Of a DNA stretch of 64,000 nt, positions 1-64,000 are shown piece by piece; positions within the stretch are counted from its first letter, which is position 1, and every line of letters begins with the position of its first letter. The notes under the pieces were generated by a model. The model saw only the letters and a program-made list of their open reading frames with translations, was not told the origin of the DNA and did no database searches. This stretch comes from Bugula neritina (taxonomy: Eukaryota; Animalia; Bryozoa). The translations under genes and the position numbers were made by a program. Location of the stretch: the NCBI GenBank assembly GCA_964035545.1, contig OZ037770.1, forward strand, positions 4,806,662 to 4,870,661. Direction: 5' to 3'.

Positions 1-1163
1 CGGAGCTGAAACAGGTTCCGGAAGTGGTGGCGTTAGACTTGGCGCTGGAGGTGGTGGGCGCACTTTTGGTAACGCAAGTGGCCTTTCCTGCCTCACCAAG
101 TCTTCTGCCCGCGGCATGATCACTTCATACTCTGGTTCAGGTCGCCGCCGCCCGCGCGTTGCTGTCTGCCTCCTGGGCTCTAACAACGGGGGAGCTTTTC
201 CTGCCGCACCTGGGCTAGTCCAATACGACTTCAAGCGAGCCTCATTTTAGATAGACACCTGTCCTGAGCGCTCAAACTTGTAGGTGTGATTGGGCATCAC
301 TTCAACTACCGCGTAGGGTCTCACGAACTTAGGCTGTAGCTTAGCCGCCTGTTCTCGATGCCTACGGCAGTTGACCATTCAGACCCAGTCTCCAACTTGG
401 TAGAGGGGTGGTTCTTCGGAGTCTTCTTTTTGCACTTGCCACTGCTTTTTCCGCAGTATTTCGTGTGCAACCTTCATTTGCTCTACCGATTTGCTGGCAT
501 ACCCAAATCCCAAACCCCAAATCCTGGGGGGGTAACCCAGTCTTCCACAGCTCGTACTCTTTCAGGATCAGTCGCCACGCCATGACGGCCGACGTGGTGC
601 CCCAGGTACTTCACCTCCAGCTGCAAGAGAGCGCTCTTGGAAGGTTTGAGCTTCAGGCCGGCACCTCTGAGTCATTCGAACATCTCCTGCATATGACTGA
701 CGTGTGTCTGGAAATCCGGGAAAATCACAATGACAACATCGAGGTAGACTAGCAGTGTCTCCCAGTGGAGCCCACTGAGGACCTGTTCCATGAGCCTCTG
801 AAACGTGGCGGGGGCGGAGGTCAACCCAAAGGGTAGTACTTTCCACTTCCACAGTCCGTTCCATGTGATGAACGCCGTCTTCTCCTGGGCGTCGGGAGTC
901 AGAGGGACCTGCCAATAACCGCTCAGCAAGTTTAGTGTGCTAAAGTACTTGCTGCCGGCCAGGGCGTCCAGAGATTCATCAATCCGAGGTAGAGGGTAGG
1001 CGTCCTGTATGCTTACGCTATTTAGTTTGCGGTAATCCACACAGAACCACCAACTGCCGTTTTTCTTCCGGACCAGGACGACCGGCGAGCTCCACGCACT
1101 ATGTGCTGGCTCTATGAGGCCGCGGTCCAAAAGATCCCGGACTTGTCGGCTGACCTCCTTTTC
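1..1163 (-). mobile_element. Ty3/Gypsy LTR retrotransposon remnant (RT fragment joined to integrase C-terminal region), inside an intron of LRR-ROCO-caspase copy A
   Basis: ORF 672-1130 carries RT motifs (WSSPVVLVRKK, CVDYRKLN, DAYPLPRID, LPFGLTSAPATFQ) with decayed YLDV. Bases 1-500 match 57657-58163 and ~520-1130 match ~59890-60480 of the element in copy B, so there is an internal deletion. Confidence 0.93.
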
Positions 1164-1589
1164 TTCATTAGTAAAAAATCACTTAGTAGATTATATAGTA
1201 TGTTTGATTTAGGTAATTCAAGTTCTACTTTTATTTATTTTGAAATAAAAGATCTGCCTTTATATTGTAAACCAAAGAAGACAAAAAAAATTATTCAATA
1301 TTGCAACTTTGTTTTTTTTTCATGCTCTTTTTTGGTTATCTATCTCCAATTCTCAGTGTAATAGAAACCAATTTTTATCCTATTCCTGTTCTTAAACAGC
1401 CTGTTAATATATTGTTTCATAATTACTTTACAATTCTAAATTTTGAATTAACTTGCCTTTAAAAATGTAACGTGTTCCTGCAAGATGATGACTTTCCAGA
1501 ATTTTATTCTCTCGTAGTGAAATAATTCACAACTTCTATTTCCTGTCTAGAAACTATAATACATTTATTAGAGCAATTAGTGAGAGGTT

Positions 1590-2356: not shown

Positions 2357-4359
2357 AATACAGAGATTAAAGAAGTTACAGAAACTCACAATTTCAGAGA
2401 ATAATTTCACCAGTCTACCTTCTTCAGTATGTGCATTGATTAATCTGCACACACTGGATATATCCAGCAACAGATCCATGACATCTTTGAACCCTGAGAT
2501 ACTACAGCTAACACATCTTGGATCCTTCGATACAGATGGATGTGATGCTCTTACATCTCCTCCACAAGAAGTCTGTGAGAGAGGACTGGAGTCTGTGCGA
2601 CAATACTACACAGACTTGGCTAAAGGTGCAGGTAGAAATCTTCCATTTGCTACAATAGTGGTGTTGGGGAACACCATGGCAGGTAAAACCAGCCTAATCA
2701 GAACATTACAGAGCACTGACAGGAAGAGAGTTCTGACTGACAGAAGTCCTAATGCAGAGCATGATGAGACCACAAAGGTGTTTAATGTGGAAGAGGTGGA
2801 AGTGAATGGTACAACTCTTCGTCTCATAGATATGGGAGGCCAAGAGGTCTACCATATCACATACCATTTGACACTAAGACAGAATTGTGTACCAGTAGTT
2901 GTAGTCAACATGGAGCAGTATGATCAGATTTCGAAAATGTCTACAGACAGAGAGGCTGTGAGAAAGTTGGCCTTTGACTTCATGTCTCACCTCTATCTCG
3001 CTCATCCATTTCTTGGCCCACCTAAGCTTGTCTTCACACACAAAGATAAGTTTCCGAGTGAAGTTTTTCAACAGCTTCGAAGAAATCTTCTTGAAGTGTC
3101 TGAGCAGTTTTGCAAAAATATTCTTGAAGAAGAGAAAGGTTTAGAAGGTGACTTTGCTCGAATTCAACATTTCACTCAATCAAACGGAAAAGTGTTCTCC
3201 GACGACAACATATATGAAGTTGGAAAATTTGACGAGTACAAGATATTTGAATCGATTAAAAAATCTCTTCTTCAAAGTTGCCGACACTTTATCAAACCCC
3301 TTCCAAAAGTCTGGGAGGATGTCAACACAAAAGTGTTGTCCTTGCAGTCCGCACACAATACCTTTGATGAAATCCTGGCAGAGATGAAGAAAGAACGGAA
3401 TGATATTGATAGAAACCAATTGGATACCATCATCATGTACATGCATGATTGTGGAAAAGTTCTCTGGTATAAGAATGTTGATGCACTCAGGCCATACATA
3501 TTTCACAAGATTACAGAAGTTACCAAACTGCTGTGTGTCTTGTATCACCATGATCCAAACATCTGGCAGAGCAGAGTAGATCAGTTCAAACCATATTTTT
3601 CAAGAGGAGTGAGAATTGAGAAGCAGGACTTTGAAGAGTCTGTGAACTACTTCCAAGCAACTGGCCTAATGATGCAATCCCTTCTTGAATATCTGATAGC
3701 TCAGGAAACTTTATTTAGAAATCCGGGTGATGTTGAAATTGGGCTTTGTTTGCTCAGCACGTTCCGTTTGTTGTATGGCCCTAGGAATGATGAATCCTAT
3801 GATTCCTACTTCATAATCCCTCAGTTTGCCAAAGAATCTTACAGCCTCTCCTACACTCAACAAAAGGAGTTACTGCTTCATACTGAGACTCAGTTTAATG
3901 GTCTGGCATTACCGCAGCATGTCTACCATCAAATGACTGTTGGTTTGTTAGAGATGTTTTCTAAAGAGTTTGCTACAATGCAAGTGAAGAGGAATGGTGC
4001 TAACGTCTACCAAGATGAAATATACACACAACTGGTACACGATTACGCATTGAGAAGAGTTTTACTCTACGTTTCATCTGATGCGTCCAACATTTCCAGA
4101 ATGTGGGAGAATCTCATTTCGGTCAACAACAACATCCTCAGACATGTTATGGAGACTTGGACTGCTAGTCGACCAGTCACTGCCTGCATTTGTGCTCACT
4201 GCTTGCTACTTGGGGTTTCCTGTCCTAAAAAACTCTTTCACCCCAAATGGTGTCTTCGATCCTTAAAAAACCTGCTGCCACCTAATGTCAAGAAGTGTGG
4301 TGGAGCTTCAAAGATGTTATGTAATGGAGAGGAGGTCCCTAGCGCTTTAATCCACCCAT
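2357..4359 (+). CDS. Large exon: terminal LRRs + ROC GTPase + COR domain (ROCO family, MFHAS1-like)
   Basis: 656-aa ORF 2436-4406. P-loop GxxxxGKT, G3 DxGGQ and G4 THxD as in ROCO proteins; LTSPPQEVCERGLESVRQY is the typical LRR-to-ROC linker. The acceptor at 2355-2356 is phase 2, matching the LRR cassette exons. Confidence 0.92.
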
Positions 4360-7300
4360 GTATGTTCACTCATAAAATTGAATTTCAACAGAAATATTTT
4401 CAATAATTGTTTCAACAGATAAATATTTACTACTTTGTGTTGCAAAAAACTTTTAGTAAAAATTTTGAGCAATTAGTTGAATATTTTGTCTTAATTATAA
4501 AATCGCAACTTAAAAGCATGAGCTCCTATTCACATGTCATTATCTCGTAAATTAAATTCTTTAAGGTTTAGTAATACAAATCTTGTTTGTTCTATTCAGG
4601 TGAGAAATTGTCAGAAACAGAATCAAATAAGTTGAAGAAGCTAGTTGCTGAGCTCAAACTGCGAGGAGATCAGAACAATTCAACTGGTAAATTTTTTTAG
4701 ACTGAACTTGATGTGGGTCATTTTACTTAATTTAGTACAGGAGTATGACCTGTGTCATGAACACACCTAAATAATCAAACCTACTCCTAATTTTGCTTGA
4801 TTTCCCATGTTTTTTCCTAATTATTCAGCTACTTTTGACTGCAGACTGTCATGAAAAAACCATATTTCTCTGAAATCAAAAGTAGCTGAATAATTAGGAA
4901 AAAATATGGGAAATTAAGCAAAATTTAGAAGAACCTTGATTTTTTAGGTGTGTTCATTTAAGCTTTACTACTTTTGGGCAAAACTCATGTTCATTAGCAG
5001 CTAAAATGTAAAAAAATAGCTAAAAACAGGTGTGTTCATCACTTTTGGGCAAAAACTTATGTTAATTAGCAGTTAAATTGTAAAAAATAGCTAAAAACTG
5101 GAGATTTCCAGTGTGCACTAAATTAAGTAAAATGACCTATGTGTACAGCCACCACTTGATAAAACTCCTTGTTTTGCAAAGCTGGCCATACATGTAGATA
5201 TCTAAGAGCTTTTTTATGCATGCGTTCATTGTAATCCATTGCTTTTTGCTGCTAGTGGTTGAGAAAAATTTTAATTGTATGGCTTTTAAATGATGAAAAA
5301 AATCAACTGTTCACATGACTGTCTAGAAATATTAGCTGATGATCTGAGTGATCTCTCTGAAGATGATGACAATCTGTACCTTGATGGAGAGAATGGGGAA
5401 GGCCTGAAGCTGATACAACTTGAATTGAAGCCAACCACCAACCCAAAGATAAAGCAGTTGTTCTCAGATACTGACAAGGTGAATGTTTAATCAGTTGATG
5501 AATATACGTCTATAGACTCTTTTTACTAGATAATCATGACTATAGTCGTTCAATTACTTTTAGAAAAAGTTCAATCTGAACGCAATTTTTCCATTTACTT
5601 CAGTTAACTTTTAATTTTTAGCCATGTCTGTTTTTGGGCTGTGTCTGTTTGGTTAAGGTTTAATCTGTTGTCACACGGTTAGGAAATATTTGTAGTGTCG
5701 AGATTTCTGGCCCCTTTGATGTATTGATTTGTGCACCTGCATGCATGGTTGAATATTTTCTGCAACATATTCTGATTTTTTTGTGAAGAGTAGCAGTAGT
5801 ATAAACATTATTCCAAAAGATATTGAAGGTCAGATGTAAATAAAGACTAAAAGAGAGGTAGAGAGGTCCGTGGTGTCCTTAAGAAATAAACTGGATGTAG
5901 TGTTAAGATCGCCTATAAGTCTCTGTGGAATAATCTCAGTGGGACAAAATTGTTTTTCGCCTGGAACCTTAAACTTTTCTGTACCTTCGCCATAATTTGC
6001 TATTGCATTCTATGGTATCTTTAAAGTTAGTAAATACTTTGTTGAAGAGGTTTGGCTTTTGAAGTTTAGTTCACATATAATGGTTTAAATGTCAAAATTG
6101 ATGATATCTTGTCAGTATGGCCATGCATTGTCATTATTTACTTCCATAGCTTTACCAATTTATATACTTGATTTAGAAAAATGTAGGATTAATTACAAGC
6201 TATTATCAACAAATCAGAATTAATATACTTGTAGCCTGCTATTGTTTTTTAAACCATACCTCAATGATATTTTTTTATGCTTAACCGACTACCAAATGCA
6301 ATGAACTATTTCGTTAGTAAAATTATCATTCGGTCTGATACATTAAAATTAATTTTATTCTAGTTTATGCTACCCAATTGGCTAATAAAATAAAATCTAA
6401 AATACAAAAAGCAATTGAGATATAAAATGTTTTTTTTCAAAAGTATGTAATTTGACTGGTTTTTTACAAGACTTAAAAATTTAAGACTTGTTTGGAGTTT
6501 GTGAATTACTACTGTATGCAATGCTTTAAGCATATTTGTATCCAGGTGCTCAGTATGACCAGAGAGAGAGGAAGAGCTCTGATAATAAACAACAAAAATT
6601 TTGTTGAAAGACCAGACTTATGCAGGGAAGGTTCAGATGCTGATGTTGAGAACGTGTCTGTCATGTTGAAATCTCTCAAGTTTGATGTTGAGACAAACAC
6701 AGACCTGAAGGCAGAGGTATGTTGTTATGGTTGTTGCTGTTTTCTTTATTTCCATCAAAAAAAAAAAAAAAAAACAAAAGGACAAAAAAATACAAATATA
6801 CAACAGTAACACAAAAAGAGCTAAATTCAATTCAAAAACAATGCGAGCACTATTTAACCATCAACTTGAAAGTTGACACAATGATGGACTGTAACTGTTC
6901 AGTTTATCAATGCCTAAAAATTAGGACTATATAGAAAACCCTAAGCATGTTTGCTGGTCACAATTTTCTTGTTTGCAGGTTGGATAATTATTATTTTATT
7001 CAGTTTTTATAACTTTGTATCAATTGTTGAACATAGTTATTTTCATATTGGTAGGAAATGATGTCTGCTGTAAAGTCTGAGATAAGAATAGAGAAAAACA
7101 ATGGCTTGGGCTGTCAAATACTGGTTATTATGACTCATGGTGGAGAAGATAACTGCATCTATGGAACTGACCTTGAGCAGGTCAACCTTACAGACTTCTA
7201 TGATTTACTCGCTCCTTTGAGTCTGAAGCCTAAACCTACAGTTGTCATCCTACAAGCTTGCAGTGAAGGTAATTACATTTTTGTATAGGAAACTTTCATT

Positions 7301-8591
7301 TTTAGTCAAGTAGTGAAAATAATACAGAGACCCTTGAAAAGTTTTTTCTGTACTGATCAAATTTATTTTTTACTCATCACGGTGCAAGTTTGAATGCGTT
7401 TGTTTTTCTTGCAGCAAACATTGATGTTAATCGAGGCAGATCAGATCTTGCAGCAGCTCAAGAAGAAGAAACTGAAGCTGTCTCTTCTACACATTCTGAA
7501 GCTGATTATGATGATATTGTATATCCTGAAACACCCAGTGTGATAAGACCCATCAGACCTGTCTCACCACCAGAATATAGAGTAGAAGAACATATGACAA
7601 GACTGGATATTGATAATCTTCTTGTTCTGAAGAGTAACGTCTGCTGTAAGTATAATAAGAGACAGTGATAGGCTGATATTTCTAAACTGTTGTACTTTGT
7701 CACCTATCTAAAAATTGTTCTTTGCCGTTTTCTTGCGTTACTTCCACATTTTTAATCTTGTTGATTTGATAAGCTTCTAAACTGAGGTGACTAAAATGTT
7801 TTCTAGAACTTTGAGATTTAAATTGTGTTACACTTTAGCTTAAAACATCTTATACTTTGTCTGACTAGACCATGATTTTGGCTGCATTTAATATTATTAT
7901 AGCATCAAAGAGACATCCTGAGTATGGATCTCCCATGATTAGAGTCCTAGTATCTTCAATCTACAAACATGCCTGTCACCGTGATCTCCACACCATCTTT
8001 CAGCAGGTAAGTTGAAAGCTCAAAAGTGTTTTTGCTATTTTAACTTTTATTCAAGAAATAATTTCTCATCATGGCATCTCTTCCATCTCCATGTTCAAAC
8101 CATCATGTCATTTGAAAGAAACAATTTAAGCTGTTCTGAGTACAAGAGAAAGTCATTCAATGTTTTACTTGTTTAAATTGTAGAGTTTAGTTTCTGTTGT
8201 TTCAATTTCTTTAGAGTAATGGCTCAGTACTATATTGATAGTTTCTCTCCTTTTATAATATGTTCTTGTAGTCTGCTATAACAACTAGTTTAATTTATTA
8301 AATGACATGACTGTAGTGGACAACTCCTAAAGTTTTACTACTCAGGATTGTTAAAGTATATTCTAACAGCTGGGAGTTGTACCTTATTTCTTCTAGTAGT
8401 GAATTGATAAACAATCTTACTAGTTCTTACTTACTCTACAGGTACAGACTAAATTAGTGAAGAAACTCTATGCAGATGAAGATTCAGAAAGAAGCAGAAA
8501 TTTGGTTGTAATCTGGAAGACTCTTCCTACCCGTAAAAGACTTTACCTGTTTCCTGGCTTTGATGGGTTGAGTGAAGAGGCCAAATCCTAA
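2357..8591 (+). CDS. LRR-ROC-COR-caspase fusion protein, copy A (3' part; 5' exons lie upstream of the window). Exons 2357-4359, 4600-4686, 5327-5478, 6546-6716, 7055-7268, 7415-7645, 7903-8006, 8442-8591
   Basis: All junctions are GT-AG with compatible phases (1,1,0,0,1,1,0), giving one open frame to TAA at 8589-8591. LRRs (LQKLTISENNFTSLP, LHTLDISSN), ROC motifs GNTMAGKTS, DMGGQEVY and THKD, COR-like MHDCGKVLWY, then caspase motifs RGRALIINNKNF, REGSDAD, IMTHG, LQACSE, SKRHPEYGSPMI and KRLYLFPG. Confidence 0.9.
4715..5138. mobile_element. MITE / foldback non-autonomous DNA transposon in intron
   Basis: Terminal inverted repeats ggtcattttacttaatttagt ... actaaattaagtaaaatgacc, with ATGT on both flanks (4711-4714, 5139-5142), plus an internal ~80 bp inverted repeat (4758-4838 vs 4877-4957). 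Confidence 0.75.
6546..8591 (+). CDS. Caspase (peptidase C14A) p20-linker-p10 exons of copy A
   Basis: His of THG at 7136-7138 and Cys of QAC at 7259-7261; acidic linker exon 7415-7645; p10 exons 7903-8006 and 8442-8591 translated by hand. Confidence 0.92.
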
Positions 8592-45556: not shown

Positions 45557-48500
45557 ATGGGAATCTGGTTGAGACATTCTGGACAGCCTCCTGTAGACTG
45601 GTCAGATGTACAGTCTGCTAATACCAAGTCATATACTATTGCTGAGGTGAAACGTGAAGTTGGGAGTTATGATATCACAGATCTCAAACTAGAGGGAACA
45701 ATTCCAAGTAACATTGGAGAGATTGCTGGTAAAGCCATGTGTCTATGTGTTTCTAACCTGACTGACAGAGCAAGTCTAGACAAGTGAGTGTCTATTAAAT
45801 AGCTGTGTAAATGTTAAACAAGTTTATTTGTGTTATTTATTAAATAATAATGGATAATAGACACTGAAGCTGAGGCATATTTTTGCTCATAATATATGCG
45901 TACAACATAATATACATCAACATAGTAATATGTCCAAGAGAACCTGTCTCTACTGTTATTTGATAGTGTTGACTGAATGATGTTTCATGTATATATATAG
46001 CTAAAAACTGGAGTAATGTACAGTTTGTAATATATTATACAGAAGATTATGTTTTGTCATCAACTGCAAATTTACAATCCTAAACATTAGTCAATATAAT
46101 AACTTACATAGCAATTTAGAGTGAGGCCTCATGTACTATAAACTAACAGCTAACCTTGCATAATGAAGCTTCCTCTCCTCACTTACAACAGAATATAACT
46201 GAAACTCTTTGGTGTTTTTTGCAACAATATATCTGTTTCCTGCATGTTTTTTCTGTTAAATACGCAATTAGCATAATATAATAGTATATTTTATTTTGAT
46301 ATGGTAAACATAAATACATGACACACTTTATATTACAGTCTATGCCAGCTGACTCAGTTAGAGAAACTAGACATAGGATATAATCCTCTCAACACAGTAC
46401 CAGAAGTTGTGTCATCACTTACATCACTTGAGGAGTTAAATGTGGAAAACTGTAAAATAGCTACTCTACCTGAGAGGTTTCTGTGTCGCAGTCTTTTTTG
46501 TTTCAAACACTCAATGATTCACATGTTGATATAATGCTTACGAAGTATGGCGAATTAGTATGTCACTATGTATTGTTGAAAAGCATAAAGCTATAAATTA
46601 CAATTTTCTTGAAGCTATATGATATTAGAATTTTCTCAAAACTTGAAAATATTGTAAATATGTTTCAGTTATCTGGCATTACATTTTCATTGCTATAAAA
46701 CCTTGTTCAACAAATACTATAGCACCCACTTGTAGTTTACTAAAATCTAGTTCATGTTAAATGCTTTTTAGCTTTTGCTATTTTACTTTAAATTTGCTTT
46801 GTTGCAATAAATATGTTTCTTGGATATTTTACCTGATTGAATACACAAGTATCGTATATACAGTATATAATAATATCCTTATACAGTGGATTACATATAT
46901 TATGCACTTTATATTACAGTCTATGTCAGCTGACTCAGTTAGAGAAATTTAACATAGAAGGGAATTCTCTCCACACAGTACCAGAAGTTGTGTCATCACT
47001 CGCATCACTTAAAGAGTTGAATATGTGGGGCTGTGAATTATCTACTCTACCTGGGAGGTTTTGTATTGCACAATATTATCTCTGTTTCAAACATTCAATA
47101 TTTCACTTCTTTAATGCTTATCAAGTAGTGTTATGCTATTTTATTATATATTGCCAACGTATGTTAAAAAACCTATAGATATGCATTTTCGAACTTGTCC
47201 AATAGTTTGTCGCAAGGTGGAAATAATACAGCATTATGGTATGCTATTGTATATCCTTATATCACAAGAACCTTTTGTAATGAATAATAAAACAGCCATC
47301 TGCAGTTTACTGGCAATCATGGTAATAATCGAATCATTCTTAGCTTCTTGCGTCAATCACTTTGACTATCCATTACCGGAATGAATTTTTTTCTGAACTT
47401 TTTACCTGACTGACTGTGCTTAGCAATATAACATGTACAGTGTATATTATTATGACACAGTAGACTACATATATCATACCCTTTATAATTATTGCAGTCT
47501 ATGCCAGCTGACTCAGTTAGAGAAACTAATTTTAAGAGGAAATCCTCTCAACACAATACCAGAAGTTGTGTCATCGCTCACATCACTTAAGGAGTTGTAT
47601 ATGGGGAACTGTAAATTATCTACTCTACCTGAGAGGTTTGTGGAACACAGTCTTTCTTGTTTCAAACACTCAATAATTCACATGTTGATATAATGCTTAC
47701 CAAGTATTGCTAATTAGTATGTCACTATGTATAGTTGAAAAGCATAAAGCTATAAATTACAATTTTCTTGAGGCTATATTGTATTTGAGTTTCTCAAAAC
47801 TTGAAAATAAATATGTTTCAGTTTTCTGGCATTACATTTCCTATTGCCATAAAAAGTTCTTCAACAAATACTATAGCACCGCTTGTACTTTACTAGAATC
47901 TATTTCATATTAAATGTCTTTTACTTTAAATATGCCTTGTCAAAATAATTTTTTTTTGCATGTTATACCATATTGAATACACCACTGTAGTATACAGAGT
48001 ACATAATATTATCCTGATACAGTGGATTGCATATATTATGCACTTTATATTACAGTCTATGCCAGCTGACTCAGTTAGACAAACTAGACATAGGATGGAA
48101 TCCTCTCAACACAGTACCAGAAGTTGTGTCATCACTCACATCACTTAAAGAGTTGTATATGGGGAACTGTAAATTGTCTACTCTACCTGAGAGGTTTGTG
48201 GAGCACAGTCTTTCTTGTTTCAAACACTCAAAAATTCACATGTTGATATAATGCTTACCAAGTATTGCTAATTAGTATGTCACTATGTATTGTTGAAAAG
48301 CATAAAGCTATAAATTACAATTTTCTTGAGGCTATATTATAATATTAGATTTTCTGAAAACTTGAAAATAAATATGTTTCAGTTATCTGGCATCACATTT
48401 CCTATTACTATGAAACCTTCTCCAACAAATACTATAGCACTCGTTTGTAGATTACTAGAATCTATTTCACATTAAATGCTTATTAGGTTTCGGTATTTCA

Positions 48501-51500
48501 CTTTGAATTTGCTTTGTTGCAATAAATTTGTTTCTTGGATATTTTACTTGATTGAATACACAAGTAGTATATACTATTATCATGATACAGTGGATTAAAC
48601 ACATAACACACTTTATATTACAGTCTATGTCAGCTGACTCAGTTAGAGAAACTAGACATAGGAATGAATCCTCTCAACACAGTACCAGAAGTTGTGTCAT
48701 CACTCACATCACTTAAAGAGTTGTATATGGGGAACTGTAAATTGTCTACTCTACCTGAGAGGTTTGTGGAGCACAGTCTTTCTTGTTTCAAACACTCAAA
48801 AATTCACATGTTGATATAATGCTTACCAAGTATTGCTAATTAGTATGTCACTATGTATTGTTGAAAAGCATAAAGCTATAAATTACAATTTTCTTGAGGC
48901 TATATTATAATATTAGATTTTCTGAAAACTTGAAAATAAATATGTTTCAGTTATCTGGCATCACATTTCCTATTACTATGAAACCTTCTCCAACAAATAC
49001 TATAGCACTCGTTTGTAGATTACTAGAATCTATTTCACATTAAATGCTTATTAGGTTTCGGTATTTCACTTTGAATTTGCTTTGTTGCAATAAATTTGTT
49101 TCTTGGATATTTTACTTGATTGAATACACAAGTAGTATATACTATTATCATGATACAGTGGATTAAACACATAACACACTTTATATTACAGTCTATGTCA
49201 GCTGACTCAGTTAGAGAAACTAGACATAGGAATGAATCCTCTCAACACAGTACCAGAAGTTGTGTCATCACTCACATCACTTAAAGAGTTGTATATGGGG
49301 AACTGTAAATTGTCTACTCTACCTGAGAGGTTTGTGGAGCACAGTCTTTCTTGTTTCAAACACTCAAAAATTCACATGTTGATATAATGCTTACCAAGTA
49401 TTGCTAATTAGTATGTCACTATGTATTGTTGAAAAGCATAAAGCTATAAATTACAATTTTCTTGAGGCTATATTATAATATTAGATTTTCTGAAAACTTG
49501 AAAATAAATATGTTTCAGTTATCTGGCATCACATTTCCTATTACTATGAAACCTTCTCCAACAAATACTATAGCACTCGTTTGTAGATTACTAGAATCTA
49601 TTTCACATTAAATGCTTATTAGGTTTCGGTATTTCACTTTGAATTTGCTTTGTTGCAATAAATTTGTTTCTTGGATATTTTACTTGATTGAATACACAAG
49701 TAGTATATACTATTATCATGATACAGTGGATTAAACACATAACACACTTTATATTACAGTCTGTGTCAGCTGACTCAGTTAGAGGAACTATACATAGGAC
49801 ACAATCCTCTCAACACAGTACCAGAAGTTGTGTCATCACTCACATCACTTAAAGAGTTGAATATGTGGTACTGTGAATTATCTACTCTACCTGAGAGGTT
49901 TGTATTGCACAATATTATCTCTGTTTCAAACATTCAATATTTCACTTCTTTAATGCTTATCAAGTAGTGTTATGCTATTTTATTATATATTGCCAACGTA
50001 TGTTAAAAAACCTATAGATATGCATTTTCGAACTTGTCCAATAGTTTGTCCTAAGGTGGAAATAATACAGCCTCATGGTATGCCATTGTATATCCTTATA
50101 TCACAAGAACCTTTTGTAATGAATAATAAAACAGCCATCTGCAGTTTACTGGCAATCATGGTAATAATCGAATCTTTCTTAGCTTCTTGTATCAATCACT
50201 TTGACTATCCTTTACCGGAATGAATTTTTTTCTGAACTTTTTACCTGACTGACTGTGCTTAGCAATATAACATGTACAGTGTATATTATTATGACACAGT
50301 AGACTACATATATCATACCCTTTATAATTATTACAGTCTATGCCAGCTGACTCAGTTAGAGAAACTAAAGTTAAGAGGAAATCCTCTCAACACAATACCA
50401 GAAGTTGTGTCATCACTCACATCACTTAAAGAGTTGAATATGGGGAACTGTAAATTGTCTACTCTACCTGAGAGGTTTGTGGAGCACAGTCTTTCTTGTT
50501 TCAAACACTCAAAAATTCACATGTTGTTATAATGCTTACCAAGTATTGCTAATTAGTATGTCACTATGTATTGTTGAAAAGCACAAAGCTATAAATTACA
50601 TATTTCTTGAGGCTATATTGAATTAGAGTTTCTCATTACTTGAAAATAAATATGTTTCAGTTATCTGTCATTACATTTCCTATCGCTATAAAACTTTTTT
50701 AACAAATATTATAGCATCCACTTGTAGTTTACTATAGTGTGTATTTCTCATTAAATGGTTATTAGAGCCTTCTGTACTTTACTATGAATATGCCTTAGCG
50801 TAATAAATTTGCTATTTGGATATTTTACTTGATTGAATATGCAGTGTTTGTTATGATACAATAAATTAAATATATCACATACTTCTTATTACAGCCTGAG
50901 CCAGCTGACTCAGTTAGAGAAACTAGACATAGGATGGAATCCTCTCAACACAATACCAGAAGTTGTGTCATCACTTAAAGAGTTGGATATGGAAGGCTGT
51001 AAATTATCTACTCTACCTGAGAGGTTTGTGTGTCACTACAAATTTTATATCATTTTTAACGTTCAATAATTGTTATTTTGAAGCAGAATTTCAACACAGT
51101 AACTACTACATTAAGATGTTTATACTTTTTCTCTGCAAACCCCCATACGAATCTTAACGTTTCAGAGGATATTGTCAATTAGCACACTATCAGTTGTATA
51201 GTTGATTATTATTCACACACTGAGTATATATAATAATTGAATACTTGTATGCTATTATAATAAACTGTTAACTTCTCATGCTCTGCATGTAATATGCTAC
51301 AATAAGTTGCTTGGTTGTTAAATTGTATATAGTTTTACCTGGTTGAAAACAAAATGTGAATACAGTATAAAGTTTTATGGTAATGCAGACCACATATATA
51401 TCATACACTTTATATTACAGCCTGTGTCAGCTGACTCAGTTAGAGAAACTAAACATAGGAAGTAATCCTCTCAACACAGTACCAGAAGTTGTGTCATCAC

Positions 51501-54500
51501 TCACCTCACTTAAAGAGTTGGATATGTGGAACTGTAGATTATCTACTCTACCTCAGAGGTTTGTGTGTTACAATAATTATTTCTTTTGTTTTAAACATTC
51601 TATATTTCACTTCTTTAATGCTTCTCAAGTAGTGTTATGCTATGATATCATATATTGCCAACGTATGTTGAAAAACATAAACATGTATTTTTTTAACTTA
51701 TCTAGTTGTTTGTCCTAATGTAGAAATAATACAATTTTATAGTGAGCCATTGTATATCCTTACATCACAATACTTTTTGTAATCAAAAATAAAGCAGGCC
51801 TCTGCAGTTTACTGACAATCATGGTAATAATCGAATCTTTCTTAGCTTCTTGCGTCAAGCACTTTGACTATCCATTACCGGAATGAATTTTTTTTCTGCA
51901 TTTCTTACTTGGCTGACTGTGCTTAGCAATATAATATGTACAGTGTATATTATTATGACACAGGAGACTACATATATCATACCCTTTATAATTATTGCAG
52001 TCTATGCCAGCTGACTCAGTTAGAGAAACTAGACATAGTAGATAATCCTCTCAACACAGTACCAGAAGTTGTGTCATCGCTCACATCACTTAAAGAGTTG
52101 GATATGAGGATCTGTGAATTATCTACTCTACCTGAGAGGTTTGTGGAACACAGTCTTTCTTGTTTCAAACATTCAATAATTCACATGTTGATATAATGGT
52201 TACCAAGTATTGCTAATTAGTATGTCACTATGTATAGTTGAAAAGCATAAAGCTATAAATTACAATTTTCTTGAGGCTATATTGTATTTGAGTTTCTCAA
52301 AACTTGAAAATAAATATGTTTCAGTTTTCTGGCATTACATTTCCTATTGCCATAAAAAGTTCTTCAACAAATACTATAGCACCGCTTGTACTTTACTAGA
52401 ATCTATTTCAGATTAAATGTCTTTTACTTTAAATATGCCTTGTCAAAATAAATTTTTTTTGCATGTTATACCATATTGAATACACCACTGTAGTATACAC
52501 AGTACATAATATTATCCTGATACAGTGGATTGCATATATTATGCACTTTATATTACAGTCTATGTCAGTTGACTCAGTTAGAGAAACTAGACATAAGAAG
52601 AAATCCTCTCAACACAGTACCAGAAGTTGTGTTATCACTCACCTCACTTAAAGAGTTGTATATGTGGAACTGTGGTTTATCTACTCTACCTCAGAGGTTT
52701 GTGTGTTACAATAATTATTTCTTTTGTTTTAAACATTCTATATTTCACTTCTTTAATGCTTATCAAGTAGTGTTATGCTATGATATCATATATTGCCAAC
52801 GTATGTTGAAAAACATAAACATGTATTTTTTTAACTTATCTAGTTGTTTGTCCTAATGTAGAAATAATACAATTTTATAGTGAGCCATTGTATATCCTTA
52901 TATCACAGAACTTTTTGTAATCAAAAATAAAGCAGCCCTCTGCAGTTTACTGACAATCATGGTAATAATCGAATCTTTCTTAGCTTCTTGCGTCAAGCAC
53001 TTTGACTATCCATTACCGGAATGAATTTCTTTTCTGAACTTTTTACCTGGTTGACTGTGCTTAGCAATATAATATGTACAGTGTATATTATTATGACACA
53101 GGAGACTACATATATCATACCCTTTATAATTATTGCAGTCTATGCCAGCTGACTCAGTTAGAGAAACTACACATAGACGGAAATCCTCTCAACACAGTAC
53201 CAGAAGTTGTGACATCACTCACATCGCTTAAAGAGTTGGATATAAAGAGCTGTGAATTATCTACTCTACCTGAGAGGTTTGTGGAACACAGTCTTTTTTT
53301 TTAGTTTCAAATGTTCAATAATTCACATTTTGATATAATGCTTACCAAGTATTGGGAATTAGTATGTCACTATGTATTGTTGAAAAGCATAAAGTTATAA
53401 ATTACATATTTCTTGAGGCTATATTGAATTAGAGTTTCTCATTACTTGAAAATAAATATGTTTCAGTTATCTGTCATTACATTTCCTATCGCTATAAAAC
53501 TTTTTTAACAAATATTATAGCATCCACTTGTAGTTTACTATAGTGTGTATTTCTCATTAAATGGTTATTAGAGCCTTCTGTACTTTACTATGGATATCCC
53601 TTAGCGTAATAAATTTGCTATTTGGATATTTTACTTGATTGAATATGCAGTGTTTGTTATGATACAATAAATTAAATATATCACATACTTCTTATTACAG
53701 CCTGAGCCAGCTGACTAAGTTAGAGAAACTATACATAGGAGGGAATCCTCTCAACACAGTACCAGAAGTTGTGTCATCACTCACATCACTTAAAGAGTTG
53801 AATATGCAGAGCTGTGAATTATCTACTCTACCTGAGAGGTTTGTGTGCCACAACAAGTTTTATATATCACTTTTAACATTCAATAATTGTTATTTTGAAG
53901 CAGAATTTCAACACAGTAAATACTACATTAAGATGTTTATACTTTTTCTCTGCAAAAACTACATATGAATCTCACCGTTTCTGAGGATATTGTCAATTAG
54001 CACACTATCTAGAAGTTTCCTCTGCTTCACAAGTTATTTTATAGTGTTTCTATTTCTTTTTGAATATCTCCCATGATAGGTTGACTGGGCTGTTTTTCAG
54101 AAATCGTTTTAATAACTATTTTTGTTATATTATAATTATAGCTACTTCTGTACACATAATTAGCATATATATTACATTATTATAGTATCACAGTTTCTTT
54201 TTACTGTCTAATTGAATGCACAAGTGCTATATACAGTATCTACATAATATTATCCTGATACAGTGGATAACATATATCATGCACTTTATATTACAGTCTA
54301 TGTCAGCTGACTCAGTTAGAGAAACTATACTTAGGAGATAATCCTCTCAAGACAGTACCAGAAGTTGTGTCATCACTCACATCACTTAAAGAGTTGAATA
54401 TGTGGAGGTGTGAATTATCTAATCTACCTGAAAGGTTTGTGGAACACAGTCCTTCTTGTTTCAAACACTCAATAATTCACATGTTTTTATAATGCTTACC

Positions 54501-57500
54501 AAGTATTGTTAATTAGTTTGACAATATGTAGTGTTGAAAAGCATAAAGCTATAAATTACAATTTTTTTGAGGCTATATGATATTAGAGTTTCTGAACACT
54601 TGAAAATAAATATGTTTCAGTTATTAGGCATTACATTTCCTATTGCTCTATAACCTTCTTTAAATAATACTATAACACCTACTTGTGGTTTACTAGAATC
54701 TATTCCCCATTACATGCTTATTAGCTTTCGGTAGTTTACTTTGAATTTGCTTTGTTGAATTAAATTTTTTTCTGAACTTTTTACCTGACTGACTGTGCTT
54801 AGCAATATAACATGTACAGTGTATATTATTATGACACAGTAGACTACATATATCATACCCTTTATAATTATTACAGTCTATGCCAGCTGACTCAGTTAGA
54901 GAAACTAAAGTTAAGAGGAAATCCTCTCAACACAATACCAGAAGTTGTGTCATCACTCACATCACTTGAAGAGTTGAATGTGGAGAAATGTGAATTATCT
55001 AATCTACCTGAGAGGTTTGTGTGTCACTACAAATTGTACATCATTTTTAACGTTCAATAGTTATTATTTTGTAGCAGAATTTCAGCACAGTAAATACTAC
55101 ATTAAGATGTTTATACTTTTTCTCTGCAAACCTCCATATGAATCTCGCCTTTACAGAGGAGATTGTCAATTAGCACACTATCTAGAAGATTCCCGACGTC
55201 ACAAATAAGTTTATAGTATTCCAATATCTTTTTTGAAATGCTTCCCATGAGAGGTTGACTAGGCTTTTCTTAAGAAATTGTTTTATCAAACCTTTTCATT
55301 ATATTATAATGATTGTTACTTCTGTACCCATAATTGGTATATATTGTAGTAATTTTAGTAATTACTAGTTTTGTGGGCTTCTAGCGAGCAATATCTTTAT
55401 ATTATCTTCCAATAATATCACGGCTTGTAACAGGAATGAATGATTTATTAATACGCAGTAAAAGTAGTAGCGAAACGATACATCCAATATCAAGGGTAAA
55501 AATATACATCTATCTTACACTAACTAGCTATCACACTCTGAGTATGGCTGCTATCTACATCCGGCGCCCTCCGCGCATTGCTGGGGGTCTCATGTGACGG
55601 ATATCGGATTGGCTGGGGAGCACGTGGGATAACATACTACACTCCCCACTACACTGCCCCCCACCCCAGCAGGAAGCCCACCATCCTGATAATACCAAAA
55701 TAAAAAAATAAAATAACAACAAAAAAACAATAAGATATCTGCATCAAAAGATCAAAATTTATACTTAGGCCAACGGTTTATTAAAAAAAAACATCTGGTT
55801 AAAATATAAAAATTAGGCACTATAAAACTAAGAGATTGTATCTGTATCAAGAGCTTTTTGTACGGCACCGAGAGATATGATGTGTAGAGAGACGGTAAGT
55901 GAGGCACCACCTGCGGCGTAGATCAGGAGGACAGCTGGAAAGAGTTAGGGACAGGGAAATAGAGAGGGGAAGGAGAACGTCATCTACGACACTGGGGTTG
56001 TCACAAAGACGGGTGTCTGGGCAATGTGGAAGGTAGACACTCAGTCTTTATCATCTCTCTTGAGCTGGGCCACAGAGTCCCGGAGAGCCTTGAGTTCAGA
56101 AGCGGCGGCTGATATCCTAGACGCCAACCTCTCTCTCTCTAGTTCATGCATCCGTTGCTCCATCTCTCTTAGATTTCTAGCAACAGAGGAGTGGCGTTTG
56201 GGGATGAAGACTGCCATCGCCACTTACGAGAGGGTCGAGGGAGACAGGTGAGGACGGGCATCATCTCTGGGGGACTTCTATCCGTTGTAAGACTACTCGG
56301 AGTACGATGTTGGGACGGGGCGCAGTGTGAGCGGGGGTGACAGGCGAGGTACCAGGGGCTTCCTAAGCCCAGGGGGTTTGGGGCAGGGTCCTTGGGTAAT
56401 GGCACGGGGAGCGGGAAATTCTTGGCTCAGCCGTTCGTAACGAGCAGGGTCTGAGATGAATGGCTTGATGAGGCCGAGAAAAGTAGGGAAGGAAAGCTTG
56501 TCCACATTGTAGAGATGTCCAACGTGACACTCCATAGTCTTCTGGTGACGGAGGGTGTAGTCCCTGTGGTAGCTGTACTCCCCACAGGGGCGGAAGGTGG
56601 TGATAAAATGTTGATGGATGTGTACTCGGAGGCGGCGAGGTGTGGTGAAATGCTGTTGACACAGCCGGCAGGTGGTGCAGTTGTCGTTTCCTCTATTTTG
56701 TTGAATCATGTTCTCGCTACCCTGGGTAACCCAGCTAGACCGGGTTATGAGTATCTCCGGTAGTGTAGCGGAAGTAGGTTCCGTCTCCCAAGCCATCTCC
56801 AATGGTGGCATATCATCATAGTTAGAACAGCGAGTGATATCTGAAAAAGCAGAATTATTGTTAGATCAAATTTGATCTTTACAGCATAATTCTGATGACA
56901 ATCGACTGTTACTAGTCTGAGAGTCATGCATCTTTTTGTACGGCACTCGAGAGACTGTGTTTGGACGTGTAGACTGGCTGAGAAACATAGTGTCAAGTTC
57001 CAGATCTAGTAGATCATCGGCCATTGTTATGTCCTCGTCGTCTTTCACGTTTAGCCCAGTCTCCAGCAATTGTGATTCAACCAGAGTGATAAAATCAGAA
57101 TTAACTGATGTCAGACCCGTTTCCATAGATAGGAATACTAGGGCTAGGCAGGCTTACTTTGGAACTTGGTATTTGGAATCATACTCAACGTTCAAGCTTG
57201 GATTTTAGTGGTTTTAGTATGTCTACCTTTGGTGATGTCAGCGTAAAAAAAGACTGGACAGCGTGTTTATTTCGCATGACTAGAACTGTTTGCCTCGGGC
57301 GCAATAATTCCACCTAATACTCCGCCCTCGCAAAAGTTGATATTTTCGCGGTGTTCACAACTTCCTTCGTTTCGCTACCAGTCTCTCAGTACCGCACCCA
57401 GCTTGGCCTTCATGTCTGCCGCTTGTAACGCAGTCGCATACGAAGTCTCAAATATACTAGGGGTTGCCTAGTACGTTGTCCACTTTCCAAGGGAAGTGGT

Positions 57501-60500: not shown

Positions 60501-63500
60501 AACCTCCTCATGGGTTGCCAGGTAGGGAGAGTCCCCGCAGCCAACGGTATCTCATGACAGACAGCTCTAGTCAGGCCCAAGTCATGATCTCCGCTGCTGA
60601 ACACTTCGTTGTACTCGCATAGCAACTTGGCCATAGCCTGTCGCTCCCCGTTGCTCGCGCAGCTATCACAGGACGACTTGTACAACTCTTGGACATGTAG
60701 CGGGACGGTCCCCCGCCCTGGAGACGGGCGCTGTTGGGGACCTTCCGTCGCATCTCCCAGCGACGGCCCTATATCCTTTTCCTGAACAGAATGGAAACGG
60801 TCCAGTACGGACCCTGATGGTAGCTTTACCGCTTCTGAGAAGGGGTTGACACACTGTATCAAGATTTCTCCTCATTCAGTCAGCCGGTTAAGACTACTGG
60901 CGAGTTGGAATCTTGCGAGCGCGCCTTCGACAACTCCCAACCCAGAGATCTGGCTACTGTTTACTCTACAGTAAATGGTAGCCCGGGTACGGCCTGGTAT
61001 TGTACAGTTCCGTATTACCTGCACGCCTCCCACTAGGGGACGGCCAGACTTGTCGACACAAGTGAGCTCCTTGCCGGCCATCAGTATAGCTGACTTGTTA
61101 AAGTCAATGCGGCAACCATGTCGCTTCAAGAATGGCATCCCTAGTATAGCATCCTCCTCGAGTTGGCTGATGACGAAGGTTTCCTGGGTGGCCTGGTCGC
61201 GAACGCGCCCAGTCAGCTCTATTATACCGTAGAATGGGATCCGCGACCCGTCTGCAAGGGTGCCAGGTTCCCCGGTATAGGAAGCTAATTCTCTCCTCTC
61301 CTTAGAGGGAAGAGCGTCAAAGACCCGACGGCTGAGGAGATTCGTGGTACACCCGGAGTCTAACAAGAAAGTGACAGACCTGCCGGCCACCTTCCTGGTA
61401 AGAAATAGCTGTCTCCATGTGGTTGTACCCTTACTCCCCCAGCGTGCTCGGTCTCGGCCTGGTGGGGCAGTGCCCGTTTCGCCCGCGGTTTTCGGGGCCT
61501 CTTAGGGCGAGGTTTTCTCCGCGGAGGGGCGATTAGTTCCCCTCCGATGTCCGGATGGACCTTGCCAGCCGGCTCCATCTCTGGTAGCCAGCTGAAGCGG
61601 TTAGCGAGAGGCAGTGTGAATGGTTCCAGTCGCCCCTCTGGTCAACTGGTCCAACGGGGTGCCTGCCACTCGTGGGGGGTATACCGCGCTGTCCGTACGA
61701 ACGCCCTGCGGTATCCACCTCGTGGTTCCTTCATTCTCGGCCTGCGGGGTTTGGAGGCGTCCGCGAGCCGTTGAAGTTTAATCGTTTCCCATATAGTGGG
61801 CAACTCGAGCAGAGATTTCCTCGTGTGCCGCATCTTCAACATAAAGCAGCTGGCCTCAGAACCTCTACCCTCGGCCTCAAAGGTCCTTGGGTGGGTTCTG
61901 TGGGGTTGGCACGGGCTAGGATCGCCACCAACTGTTCTAACATGGCTATCATGCGGTCCACCTCCGCTTCAAGAGGAAGGGTGGTGGTGGCGGCAGCCAC
62001 TTGGACTGGATGGTCCGGTCCCGAAGTGATTTGTTGGGAACTCACTTTAGCTCGGTAGAATTGTTTGGCCAAGATATAGGCCTCACCTTCATGCAGTGCA
62101 TTCTCTATCGTAGTCACCCCTCTTGCATGAAGCTGGTGGTGGAAACCCAAATCATTGAGGGACTGTACAAAGGCGTCATAGGTGTAGTGTTCCCGGTGTG
62201 TTTCTGGCAAGTTGCTGTATGCGATCTGTGCCAGTCTCTTCACTAGGGTAGCATGATCCTGTAGTGGTGTGCGCGCTTCTTAGTGCAACCTTTGTAAACG
62301 GGCCCTGGCGTCCACAGCGGAGATGCCGAAACGGGCCCGCAGCGCAGCAAAGATCCCGTTTACACTGGATCCCAGTCCGTACGACTTCGCTTGCTTCATC
62401 AGCGCCGTCCGTAGTTGAATCAGGGGTACTCGTGGTGGCCATCGAGTGATGGCCATGACTTCGTTGAATTCTCGAATAAATTGTTCAACATCTTGTAGGC
62501 CCGTAACATACTACACTTCCCACTACAACATTATATATTTTTATAGTAACACAGTTTCTTATTATTGTCTAATAAGTAAGAAAACTACTTTCTTATATTT
62601 ATAATGACATCACATTGCAACATAATTGACTCAATCAACCGTATTGTGTAAAGCTCATTAGTAAAAAGTCACTTAGTAGATTATATAGTATGTTTGATTT
62701 AGGTAATTCAAGTTTTACTTTTAATTATTTTGAAATAAAAGATCTGCTTTTATATTGTAAACCGAAGATGACAAAAAAAATTATTAAATATTGCAACTTT
62801 TTTTTTCATGCTCTCCTTTGGTTATTTATCTCCAATTCTCAGTGTAATAGAAGCCAATTTTTATCTTATTCCTGTTCTCAAACAGCCTGTTAATATATTG
62901 TTTCATAATTAATTTACAATTCTAAATTACGAATCAACTGGCCTTTAAAGGTGCAACATGTTCCTGCAAGCCGATGACTTTCCAGAATTGTATTCTCTCA
63001 TAGTGAAATAATTCACAACTTCTATTTCCTGTCTAGAAACTATAATACATTTATTAGGGTAATTAGTGAGAGGTTGTGGCAGAAGTATTTTATTTTACTT
63101 GAAATTACTTTAATGCTTTGCGTAGATGTTTCAGAGCTGTACTGTGTTCCTATTTGATGATAAATTGCATGTATTATGGCACATAAAACAATATTCCTTA
63201 TAATGATAACATCCATATAGTAGAATATCAGTGTGAACAGTTACTCAGTGATCAGAAGTGTCAGAAGTATTTTATTTTCACTTCACATTACTTTAATGCC
63301 TTATGCAGATGCCACAGAGCTGTAGCCTACCGTGTTCCTATTTGCTGATAACTGTGTTGTGGCACATACTAGGAATTTTCTACTCTGTGGTATAAAATAT
63401 TATTCCTTCTGGTAGAATACCAGTGTGAACAGTTACTCAGTTATCTGCCATATAAAAAAAGATGATAGTATTACATGTAGGTTGTTTTTTTATGACAGTA

Positions 63501-64000
63501 CTTAGTACAAATGTAGCACTTTTTTTACCAAATATATACTTACAATTATACTGTTATATTATATATCTTTATAAAATAGTTAAAATGTTATGAATCATAT
63601 ATAATATGATACTCGTACATAATTGTAACTTAGACATACTTGTTTTCTTTCCTTAATTAATGTACTAATTCAAGGTATTGTATATAAACTTGTTATAGTA
63701 ACTGCAACTTAGTACTATATTATGTGTAATTATTGTTATACTAATATTGGGTATCTTTATGAAAACTATTATATCAATTACCTGTATAGCTAGGTCTAAT
63801 AATAGAAATCTTATATATTAATAGAATACAGAGATTAAAGAAGTTACAGAAACTCACAATTTCAGAGAATAACTTCACCAGTCTACCTTCTTCAGTGTGT
63901 GCATTGAGTAATCTGCACACATTGGATATAGGCAGCAACAGATCCATGACAGCCTTGAACCCTGAGATACTACAGCTAACACATCTTGAGTTCTTCTATA
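45557..64000 (+). CDS. LRR-ROC-COR(-caspase) gene, copy B, 5' part: first coding exon 45557-45783, 16 LRR exons 46339-55014, then LRR/ROC exon from 63825 running off the window
   Basis: ATG exon (MGIWLRHSG...LKLEGTIPSNIGEIAG...SLD) ends in phase 2. All LRR exons are phase 2/2. The exon at 63825 begins in phase 2 and nearly duplicates 2357-2530 (IQRLKKLQKLTISENNFTSLPSSVCAL). Confidence 0.87.
46339..55014 (+). repeat. Array of 16 LRR cassette exons (two 23-aa LRRs each) starting at 46339, 46920, 47498, 48056, 48624, 49192, 49760, 50337, 50895 (129 bp), 51421, 52001, 52559, 53139, 53701, 54297 and 54877
   Basis: Each is flanked by (a/g)cag and gttt. Consensus LCQLTQLEKLxIxxNPLNTVPEVVSSLTSLKELxMxxCxLSTLPER; no stops or frameshifts in any exon; period ~525-595 bp. 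Confidence 0.95.
55345..55653 (-). repeat. 3' LTR (TGTAG...CTACA) with adjacent polypurine tract
   Basis: Inverted termini; its right end matches 62504-62527; a C-rich tract follows at 55656-55668. Confidence 0.85.
56041..56811 (-). pseudogene. Extra ORF (C2H2-like zinc finger, Pro-rich linker, coiled coil) between pol and 3' LTR
   Basis: TCRLCQQHFTTPRRLRVHIHQHFITTFRPCGEYSYHRDYTLRHQKTMEC and NLREMEQRMHELERERLASRISAAASELKALRDSVAQLKR. Confidence 0.7.
62655..64000 (+). repeat. Paralogue of 1165-2530 (intron + LRR/ROC exon start), offset ~61.5 kb
   Basis: Colinear near-identity from tcattagtaaaaa.tcacttagtag to gctaacacatcttg. Confidence 0.95.

What the first reader, a model, noticed from the sequence alone, without database searches (positions are those of the whole stretch)
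2357..8591. ROCO GTPase fused to a complete caspase: LRR-ROC-COR-caspase in one polypeptide
Seen: the ROC-COR exon splices through two short linker exons into five caspase exons, all junctions GT-AG and in phase, with no intervening stop. Established: ROCO proteins (LRRK1/2, DAPK1, MFHAS1) dimerise through COR and usually carry kinase or death domains, and initiator caspases are activated by induced dimerisation. Inference: this is a self-contained sensor-switch-effector, in which LRR ligand binding drives ROC/COR dimerisation and activates the attached caspase, like an NLR/apoptosome using a GTPase instead of NACHT/NB-ARC and needing no adaptor. I do not know a characterised protein with this architecture.
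Basis: partly seen in the sequence, partly recalled or inferred. Interest (0 to 1): 0.93.

Follow-up and report, generated by a model that had tools for sequence, protein, structure and literature searches.

The report
Bryozoan ROCO GTPase fused to caspase
This is the 3' part of a real, spliced animal gene (probably a bryozoan's) that joins a leucine-rich-repeat surface, an LRRK2-like GTPase switch and a caspase protease in one protein; it belongs to a large, untested family whose design also occurs in amphioxus and has been mentioned in passing for a worm and for bacteria.

Summary
Observation confirmed. Eight exons (2357-8591) splice GT-AG and in phase, giving about 1,037 residues without a stop: two LRRs, ROC, COR, an acidic linker and a caspase with His/Cys dyad and Arg/Gln/Arg pocket. 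RNA contigs of near copies (mostly 95-97% alike) support every junction, directly or through contig ends; exon 3 starts at 5327. The donor at 4359 is kept in seven related loci, so the stop at 4406 is intronic. 2357 is an internal exon: the start and most LRRs lie before the window. The neighbouring paralogue shows the missing part, 16 variable two-LRR cassette exons. The architecture is not unique: RefSeq holds full-length Watersipora and amphioxus models, and papers mention amphioxus 'LRRs-caspase', an Owenia ROC-caspase and bacterial LRR-Roc-COR-caspase; none was tested. Best reading: a one-chain intracellular sensor whose ROC-COR cycle controls caspase dimerisation. Direction is unproven, since bacterial Roco monomerises on GTP. 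This copy's caspase carries two small in-frame deletions. This scan reported the same family many times on other DNA of this genome.

The parts
2357..4359 (+). Internal exon (phase 2 in, phase 1 out): last two LRRs, ROC GTPase, COR-A and COR-B ending in a CxHC...C motif
   Evidence: RNA pieces begin at 2354-2355 and end at 4359
2667..2690 (+). ROC P-loop (G1) GNTMAGKT; G2 Thr in DETT at 2763-2774, G3 DMGGQ at 2829-2843, G4 THKD at 3036-3047
   Evidence: G, K and T of the P-loop, DxGG and THxD invariant in 22 relatives
4360..4599 (+). Intron holding the ORF stop at 4404-4406; donor conserved, read-through tail not conserved
4600..4686 (+). Linker exon 2 (short predicted amphipathic helix)
5327..5478 (+). 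Linker exon 3 (acidic stretch, then the caspase N-terminal extension); acceptor 5327 used in RNA
   Evidence: joint 4685>5326 GT..AG in four runs; homologous exon in L001, L002, L084-L086
6546..6716 (+). Caspase exon 1 (large subunit start; Arg179-equivalent at 6624-6626)
   Evidence: Pfam C14 7e-9; alignment to caspase-3
7055..7268 (+). Caspase exon 2: catalytic His (7136-7138, MTHGG) and Gln/Cys (QACSE, Cys 7259-7261); three residues shorter than paralogues before the KPK strand
7415..7645 (+). Caspase exon 3: Asp/Glu-rich intersubunit linker and start of the small subunit
7903..8006 (+). Caspase exon 4: Arg341-equivalent (7911-7913); two residues shorter than paralogues just before it
   Evidence: joint 7645>7903 in RNA
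8442..8591 (+). Caspase exon 5: dimer strand beta6 with Trp (8514-8516) at the caspase-3 Val266 / caspase-9 Phe404 position, LYLFP end, stop TAA
   Evidence: RNA loose end at 8009 reads into it
1..1164 (-). Decayed Ty3/gypsy element lying in the intron upstream of the ROC exon; the same element sits upstream of the neighbouring paralogue
   Evidence: RT-like ORF; about 90% identity to 57657-60481
45557..55016 (+). Neighbouring tandem paralogue, 5' part: candidate first coding exon at 45557-45784 and 16 two-LRR cassette exons, phase 2/2; proxy for the missing 5' part of this gene
62655..64000 (+). Neighbouring paralogue: intron and start of its ROC exon (acceptor near 63825), 92.5% identical to 1165-2532

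Best explanation
A member of a large bryozoan family of single-chain cytosolic receptors built as variable LRR array - ROC GTPase - COR - acidic linker - caspase. SHOWN: spliced in-frame fusion, intact GTPase motifs, complete COR fold, caspase dyad and Asp-pocket residues, purifying selection on both halves, family expansion, surface-biased variation in the LRR cassettes of the neighbouring copy. INFERRED: the LRR array recognises a foreign or damage-derived ligand and changes the nucleotide and oligomer state of ROC-COR; this brings two caspase domains together, which they would do poorly alone because of a bulky Trp at the dimer axis, as for caspase-9; the dimer cleaves its Asp-rich linker and then death or defence substrates, without a CARD/DED adaptor. 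It would work like an NLR inflammasome or apoptosome folded into one chain, with a Roco GTPase in place of the STAND ATPase. Whether GTP loading or GTP release is the 'on' step is open.
For: Splicing and frame. Same exon order in 4 of 4 JGI paralogue loci, one ENA locus (first caspase exon) and two Watersipora loci. RefSeq XP_067947674.1 and XP_067948342.1 are full-length LRR-(ROC)-COR-caspase models. dN/dS 0.15 for ROC-COR and 0.16-0.23 for caspase exons against paralogues. LRR cassettes: pN/pS 1.14 at concave-face positions against 0.50 elsewhere. Trp aligns with caspase-3 residue 266, whose caspase-9 counterpart Phe404 impedes dimerisation (PMC1088972). In amphioxus and bacteria the same LRR-ROC-COR core carries swappable defence effectors: caspase, GT4, OTU, Death; TIR, DUF4062, CHAT; PMC8195603.
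Against: No biochemical or cellular data for any member. Bacterial Roco monomerises on GTP (PMC5714945), so COR dimers may be the resting state. This copy has QACSE instead of QACRG and two small in-frame deletions in the caspase; paralogues L002 and L084 have Glu for the pocket Gln and Ile for the pocket Arg, so some members may be weak or non-Asp proteases. RNA contigs are near copies, not this locus, and no single contig spans COR to caspase. The 5' LRR array of this gene lies outside the window and was not read. LRR cassettes are not independent samples (recent duplication or conversion).
Confidence: 0.55

Rival explanations
1. Same parts, opposite logic: the COR dimer (empty or GDP-bound) holds the caspases in an inactive arrangement; GTP loading breaks it, and the freed or self-cleaved caspase domains then pair or assemble on a membrane or higher oligomer.
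For: C. tepidum Roco is dimeric when empty or GDP-bound and monomeric with GTP (PMC5714945); the model matches that protein's fold; a long acidic linker with Asp residues separates COR and caspase.
Against: Caspases need dimerisation and the Trp at the dimer axis argues for a scaffold rather than release. MFHAS1, the closer human type, forms nucleotide-dependent complexes whose nature is unknown (PMC6337361).
Confidence: 0.18
2. This copy, or its subfamily, is a weak protease or decoy: the caspase fold serves as a binding or regulatory module (cFLIP-like) that pairs with active family members or traps pathogen inhibitors.
For: Three-residue and two-residue in-frame deletions, Ser after the catalytic Cys, altered pocket residues in paralogues.
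Against: His, Cys, Gln and both Arg are present here; Watersipora members also have QACS/QACG; expressed near copies share both deletions and caspase exons are under purifying selection.
Confidence: 0.14
3. The protein is a developmental or self/non-self death switch (polypide regression, colony fusion or rejection) rather than a pathogen sensor.
For: From general knowledge, bryozoan colonies cycle zooids through regression and meet neighbouring colonies; variable LRR arrays would also suit allorecognition. Not tested here.
Against: The same core carries anti-invader effectors in solitary amphioxus and in bacteria (PMC8195603); a large expansion with tandem arrays is typical of immune receptors.
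Confidence: 0.08
4. The fusion is not made at this locus: the ROC ORF ends at 4406 with a separate caspase gene behind it, or this copy is a silent duplicate whose 5' link is disturbed by the gypsy insertion.
For: An in-frame stop lies 45 bases behind the donor; a Watersipora model at L003 ends without caspase; no contig is shown to come from this exact copy; a retroelement sits in the upstream intron.
Against: The donor is conserved in 7 of 7 related loci while the read-through tail varies from 2 to 50 residues; the first caspase exon has a splice acceptor and no start codon at its edge; the frame is intact over 3.1 kb and has few departures at conserved columns.
Confidence: 0.05

Closest known systems
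Amphioxus (Branchiostoma) LRR-ROC-COR-caspase models, e.g. BRAFLDRAFT_67388; 'LRRs-caspase' hybrids of PMC2575513
   Same: Same domain order, intact caspase motif, multi-copy; at least 11 clusters with LRR+Roc+COR+C14 in three species and hybrids. Caspase introns at matching positions.
   Different: Separate ROC-COR clade (100/100) in which caspase alternates with GT4, OTU and Death; LRR-ROC-COR is one exon, without cassette exons; caspases only 26-27% identical to Watersipora ones and not sister to them in a thin tree. The 2008 paper did not mention ROC-COR; whether its models are these proteins could not be checked.
Owenia fusiformis caspase with a ROC pro-domain (PMC11463336)
   Same: ROC plus caspase in one lophotrochozoan protein.
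   Different: A single sequence noted in passing within caspase-Y; LRR and COR not mentioned; sequence not available here, so kinship untested.
Bacterial AP-GTPase (Roco) conflict systems (PMC8195603)
   Same: LRR + AP-GTPase + COR + C-terminal effector, with caspase among at least 24 effectors; TIR, DUF4062 and CHAT tails seen here in 42 metagenome Roco proteins; nearest Atlas cluster is cyanobacterial COR+CHAT (lead only).
   Different: The window's ROC-COR groups with animal sequences, apart from bacterial ones (100/100); its protease is an animal-type caspase with spliceosomal introns.
Human MFHAS1 (MASL1) and other ROCO proteins (LRRK1/2, DAPK1)
   Same: LRR-ROC-COR core, fold and GTPase motifs; RefSeq names Watersipora relatives 'MFHAS1 homolog'.
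   Different: MFHAS1 ends after COR (PMC6337361); LRRK1/2 and DAPK1 carry kinases; none has a protease.
NLR inflammasomes and the Apaf-1/caspase-9 apoptosome
   Same: Repeat sensor + nucleotide switch + proximity-activated caspase as a working scheme.
   Different: No NACHT/NB-ARC, no CARD/DED/PYD; the switch is a GTPase, the sensor is N-terminal and the caspase is in cis.

Membership tests
ROCO proteins | ROC GTPase domain with G1-G4 motifs | tested here: met
   Pfam Roc 31.6 bits above cut-off 27; motifs at 2667-3047
ROCO proteins | COR directly after ROC | tested here: met
   Pfam COR-A only weak, but the model aligns over its whole length to LRRK1, LRRK2 and CtRoco, and to COR-only 3dpt
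ROCO proteins | Nucleotide-dependent monomer/dimer cycle | not testable with these tools
   needs biochemistry; direction known only for CtRoco (PMC5714945)
Caspases (C14A) | His-Gly and QACxG catalytic motifs | tested here: met
   MTHGG and QACSE aligned to CED-3 and caspase-3/8; Ser-Glu replace Arg-Gly after Cys
Caspases (C14A) | Asp pocket Arg179, Gln283, Arg341 | tested here: met
   loop before Arg341 is two residues short
Caspases (C14A) | Large and small subunits with cleavable linker | tested here: met
   exons 4-8 cover both subunits by homology to full-length Watersipora models and caspase-3
Caspases (C14A) | Asp-specific proteolytic activity | not testable with these tools
   no assay
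Classical initiator caspases | CARD or DED prodomain | tested here: not met
   no death-fold hit in any exon or in full-length relatives
NLR / STAND receptors | NACHT or NB-ARC ATPase | tested here: not met
   central domain is a Roco GTPase
NLR / STAND receptors (works like) | Diversifying LRR sensor | tested here: inconclusive
   neighbouring paralogue: pN/pS 1.14 on the concave face against 0.50 elsewhere; cassettes not independent; this gene's own array is outside the window
Bacterial AP-GTPase conflict systems | ROC-COR nested among bacterial Roco proteins | tested here: not met
   animal sequences are one side of a 100/100 branch
Amphioxus ROCO-caspases (orthology) | One clade with bryozoan fusions, apart from amphioxus ROCOs with other effectors | tested here: not met
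   AU p 9e-10 (group named after a quick tree had been seen). A shared ancestral fusion with later swapping in amphioxus is not excluded; that test did not finish.

The most novel reading that the evidence does not exclude
Bryozoans use a greatly expanded family of one-chain LRR-Roco-caspase receptors, with modular cassette-exon LRR arrays and diversified caspase pockets, as a main intracellular immune or death-sensing system; the design arose separately in bryozoans, amphioxus and bacteria, making Roco GTPases a GTP-driven counterpart of NLR ATPases and giving a direct protease read-out of the Roc-COR cycle.
Probability: 0.35. Interest if true: 0.85.

Novelty: new variant of a known kind. Interest (0 to 1): 0.62.

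Why it matters
No ROCO protein with a caspase output has been tested in any paper found here. If the inference holds, it is an animal sensor-to-protease receptor that needs no adaptor and uses a GTPase instead of a STAND ATPase. It would also make an open question testable: whether the Roc-COR dimer or monomer is the active state, which is debated for LRRK2. A caspase that needs dimerisation is a built-in reporter of that state. For bryozoan biology it points to a candidate main immune-receptor family that automatic annotation hides under names such as 'MFHAS1 homolog'.

Tried and rejected
Separate caspase gene after the stop at 4406: rejected by donor conservation and RNA contigs. Acceptor 5336 for exon 3: in frame, but RNA uses 5327. 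LRR exons or a start in 1165-2356: none found. Recent transfer from bacteria: rejected by the ROC-COR trees. Degenerate pseudogene: not supported; no stops, four substitutions at conserved columns (within the range of close paralogues), 10 synonymous against 16 non-synonymous among the best-supported differences from RNA contigs, a biased subset. The metagenome scan gave mostly bacterial Roco genes, not paralogues. Exon 8 alone had no PDB match. The test of bryozoan plus all amphioxus ROCOs as one clade did not finish. The Owenia sequence and the 2008 amphioxus model numbers could not be retrieved. Literature searches for Bugula plus caspase plus LRR and for ROC-COR plus caspase plus Branchiostoma found nothing.

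Full report
Observation. The eight exons 2357-4359, 4600-4686, 5327-5478, 6546-6716, 7055-7268, 7415-7645, 7903-8006 and 8442-8591 are separated by GT..AG introns, their phases match, and the only stop is the last codon (run with the alternative in-frame acceptor 5336). The in-window part encodes about 1,037 residues. Pfam finds LRR, Roc and a weak COR-A in the big exon and Peptidase_C14 in the exons at 6546 and 7055. An AlphaFold model of the big exon (pLDDT 85.7) matches LRRK1, LRRK2 and C. tepidum Roco over 640-720 columns, so ROC and a full COR are present. G1-G4 motifs are intact and their core residues invariant in 22 relatives.

Is it one transcript? Four probable RNA runs, held as contigs of near copies, were laid on 2310-8300. 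Pieces end exactly at 4359 in three runs. Two of them (491 and 392 letters) carry 127 further letters and share their depth values with the joint 4685>5326, which fits 87 letters of exon 2 plus about 40 of exon 3, so exons 1-2-3 lie on one contig and exon 3 starts at 5327. All four runs have a contig going from 5385/5386 to 6544, with unknown letters between, which links exon 3 to the first caspase exon in a related copy. Loose ends at 6717 and 8009 read into exons 5 and 8; joints 7265>7413 and 7645>7903 cover the rest. No single contig spans COR to caspase, and the informative contigs are about 95-97% alike, so this exact locus is not shown to be expressed. Independent support: the phase-1 donor at the end of the ROC-COR exon is conserved in seven related loci while the read-through tail is not; four JGI paralogue loci and two Watersipora loci have the same caspase exons in the same order, and an ENA locus has the first; RefSeq has full-length 1,419 and 1,413 aa Watersipora subatra models with LRRs, ROC-COR homology and a whole caspase.

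The missing 5' part. Position 2357 is an internal phase-2 acceptor; no start or LRR exon lies in 1165-2356, and 1-1164 is a decayed gypsy element. The window ends in a tandem paralogue: 62655-64000 is 92.5% identical to 1165-2532, the same gypsy element lies before it, and before that are 16 two-LRR exons at 46339-55016, phase 2/2, spaced 526-596 bases, with a candidate first exon at 45557. Their variation is concentrated on the concave face (pN/pS 1.14 against 0.50), though the cassettes are not independent. Paralogue loci L001, L002, L084 and L085 also have LRR exons upstream. An unchecked first-stage note places a similar array just before this window (s1-453639). The likely full protein is a short N-terminal piece, a long LRR array, ROC-COR, linker and caspase.

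The caspase. His (MTHGG), Cys (QACSE) and the Asp-pocket Arg, Gln, Arg align with CED-3, caspase-3, -8 and -1 (the exon 7 match is weak on its own). Against paralogues this copy lacks three residues before the KPK strand and two before the Arg341 equivalent; expressed near copies share both. L002, L084 and L085 have Glu for the pocket Gln, and L002 and L084 have Ile for the pocket Arg, so specificity or activity varies in the family. Both halves are under purifying selection (dN/dS 0.15-0.23). In strand beta6 a Trp, shared by three paralogues, aligns through Watersipora P0089 with caspase-3 residue 266. The caspase-9 counterpart, Phe404, impedes dimerisation (PMC1088972). This suggests, by inference only, a caspase that needs a scaffold to pair.

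Family and origin. About 30 JGI clusters match the big exon at 39-81%; the four traced come from one sample and all carry caspase exons. The closest named relatives are from Watersipora subatra, so the source is probably a bryozoan; Bugula neritina is my inference and that of earlier notes, not a tool result. The same architecture occurs in at least 11 amphioxus clusters, beside sisters ending in GT4, OTU or Death domains. In ROC-COR trees the bryozoan-type and amphioxus sets are separate clades within an animal group apart from bacteria; joining bryozoan with only the caspase-bearing amphioxus sequences is rejected (AU p 9e-10, LG+G4, group named after seeing the quick tree; 24 and then further redundant rows were left out for run time). 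A small caspase tree does not make the two fused sets sisters, but it has long branches and few outgroups. Separate fusions are plausible, not shown; shared caspase intron positions may simply be ancestral.

Prior knowledge. Amphioxus 'LRRs-caspase' hybrids were proposed as direct links from recognition to apoptosis (PMC2575513), without mention of ROC-COR. An Owenia caspase with a ROC pro-domain is noted in PMC11463336. Bacterial LRR + AP-GTPase + COR proteins with caspase among 24 or more effectors are described in PMC8195603; I saw TIR, DUF4062 and CHAT tails in metagenome Roco proteins. No paper found treats the bryozoan family or tests any such protein; the library lacks most subscription journals. 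Earlier notes of this scan report the same family many times in this genome; their copy numbers (50 to 109) I did not check.

Mechanism. Most likely (0.55) a one-chain sensor: the LRR array reads a ligand, ROC-COR changes nucleotide and oligomer state, and the caspases are paired and self-process.

Verdict. Real gene, correct anatomy, a ROCO protein and a caspase by sequence, not an NLR. New variant of a known kind: the design has been glimpsed in three other lineages but never characterised, and the bryozoan expansion with cassette LRR exons appears undescribed. Interest 0.62.

Noticed in passing
window 45557-55016: Sixteen near-identical two-LRR cassette exons, all phase 2/2, variable mainly at concave-face positions; they belong to the next ROCO paralogue and any subset would stay in frame.
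   Followed up: partly
window 1-2532 against 57657-64000: Tandem duplication of roughly 61 kb that postdates a gypsy insertion in the intron before the ROC exon (element about 90%, intron and exon 92.5% identical).
   Followed up: partly
window 39388-39762: Broken fragment of another ROCO exon (stops and a frame change), ending just after the P-loop region.
   Followed up: partly
window 9862-15226: A second gypsy-like element with 347-base terminal repeats, 91.6% identical, directly downstream of the gene.
   Followed up: no
L002:13791-14836, L084:13270-14060, L085:13079-13294: Paralogue caspases have Glu in place of the pocket Gln (ETC, EVC) and, in L002 and L084, Ile in place of the Arg341 equivalent: possible changed specificity or pseudo-caspases.
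   Followed up: no
P0258 (Lingula anatina): RIG-I/MDA5-like helicase with an N-terminal caspase domain in place of CARDs: another sensor-caspase fusion.
   Followed up: no
P0260 (JGI): LRRC8/pannexin-like membrane region + LRR + caspase in one 903-residue protein.
   Followed up: no
P0213-P0253 (Branchiostoma): Amphioxus ROCO proteins swap C-terminal effectors (caspase, GT4 glycosyltransferase, OTU, Death) among close relatives.
   Followed up: partly
L003 (Watersipora): Two overlapping annotated products at one locus, one ending after COR and one carrying the caspase: alternative isoforms or an annotation split.
   Followed up: no
window 4710-5310: A short repeated element inside intron 2 draws very deep RNA contig coverage.
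   Followed up: no
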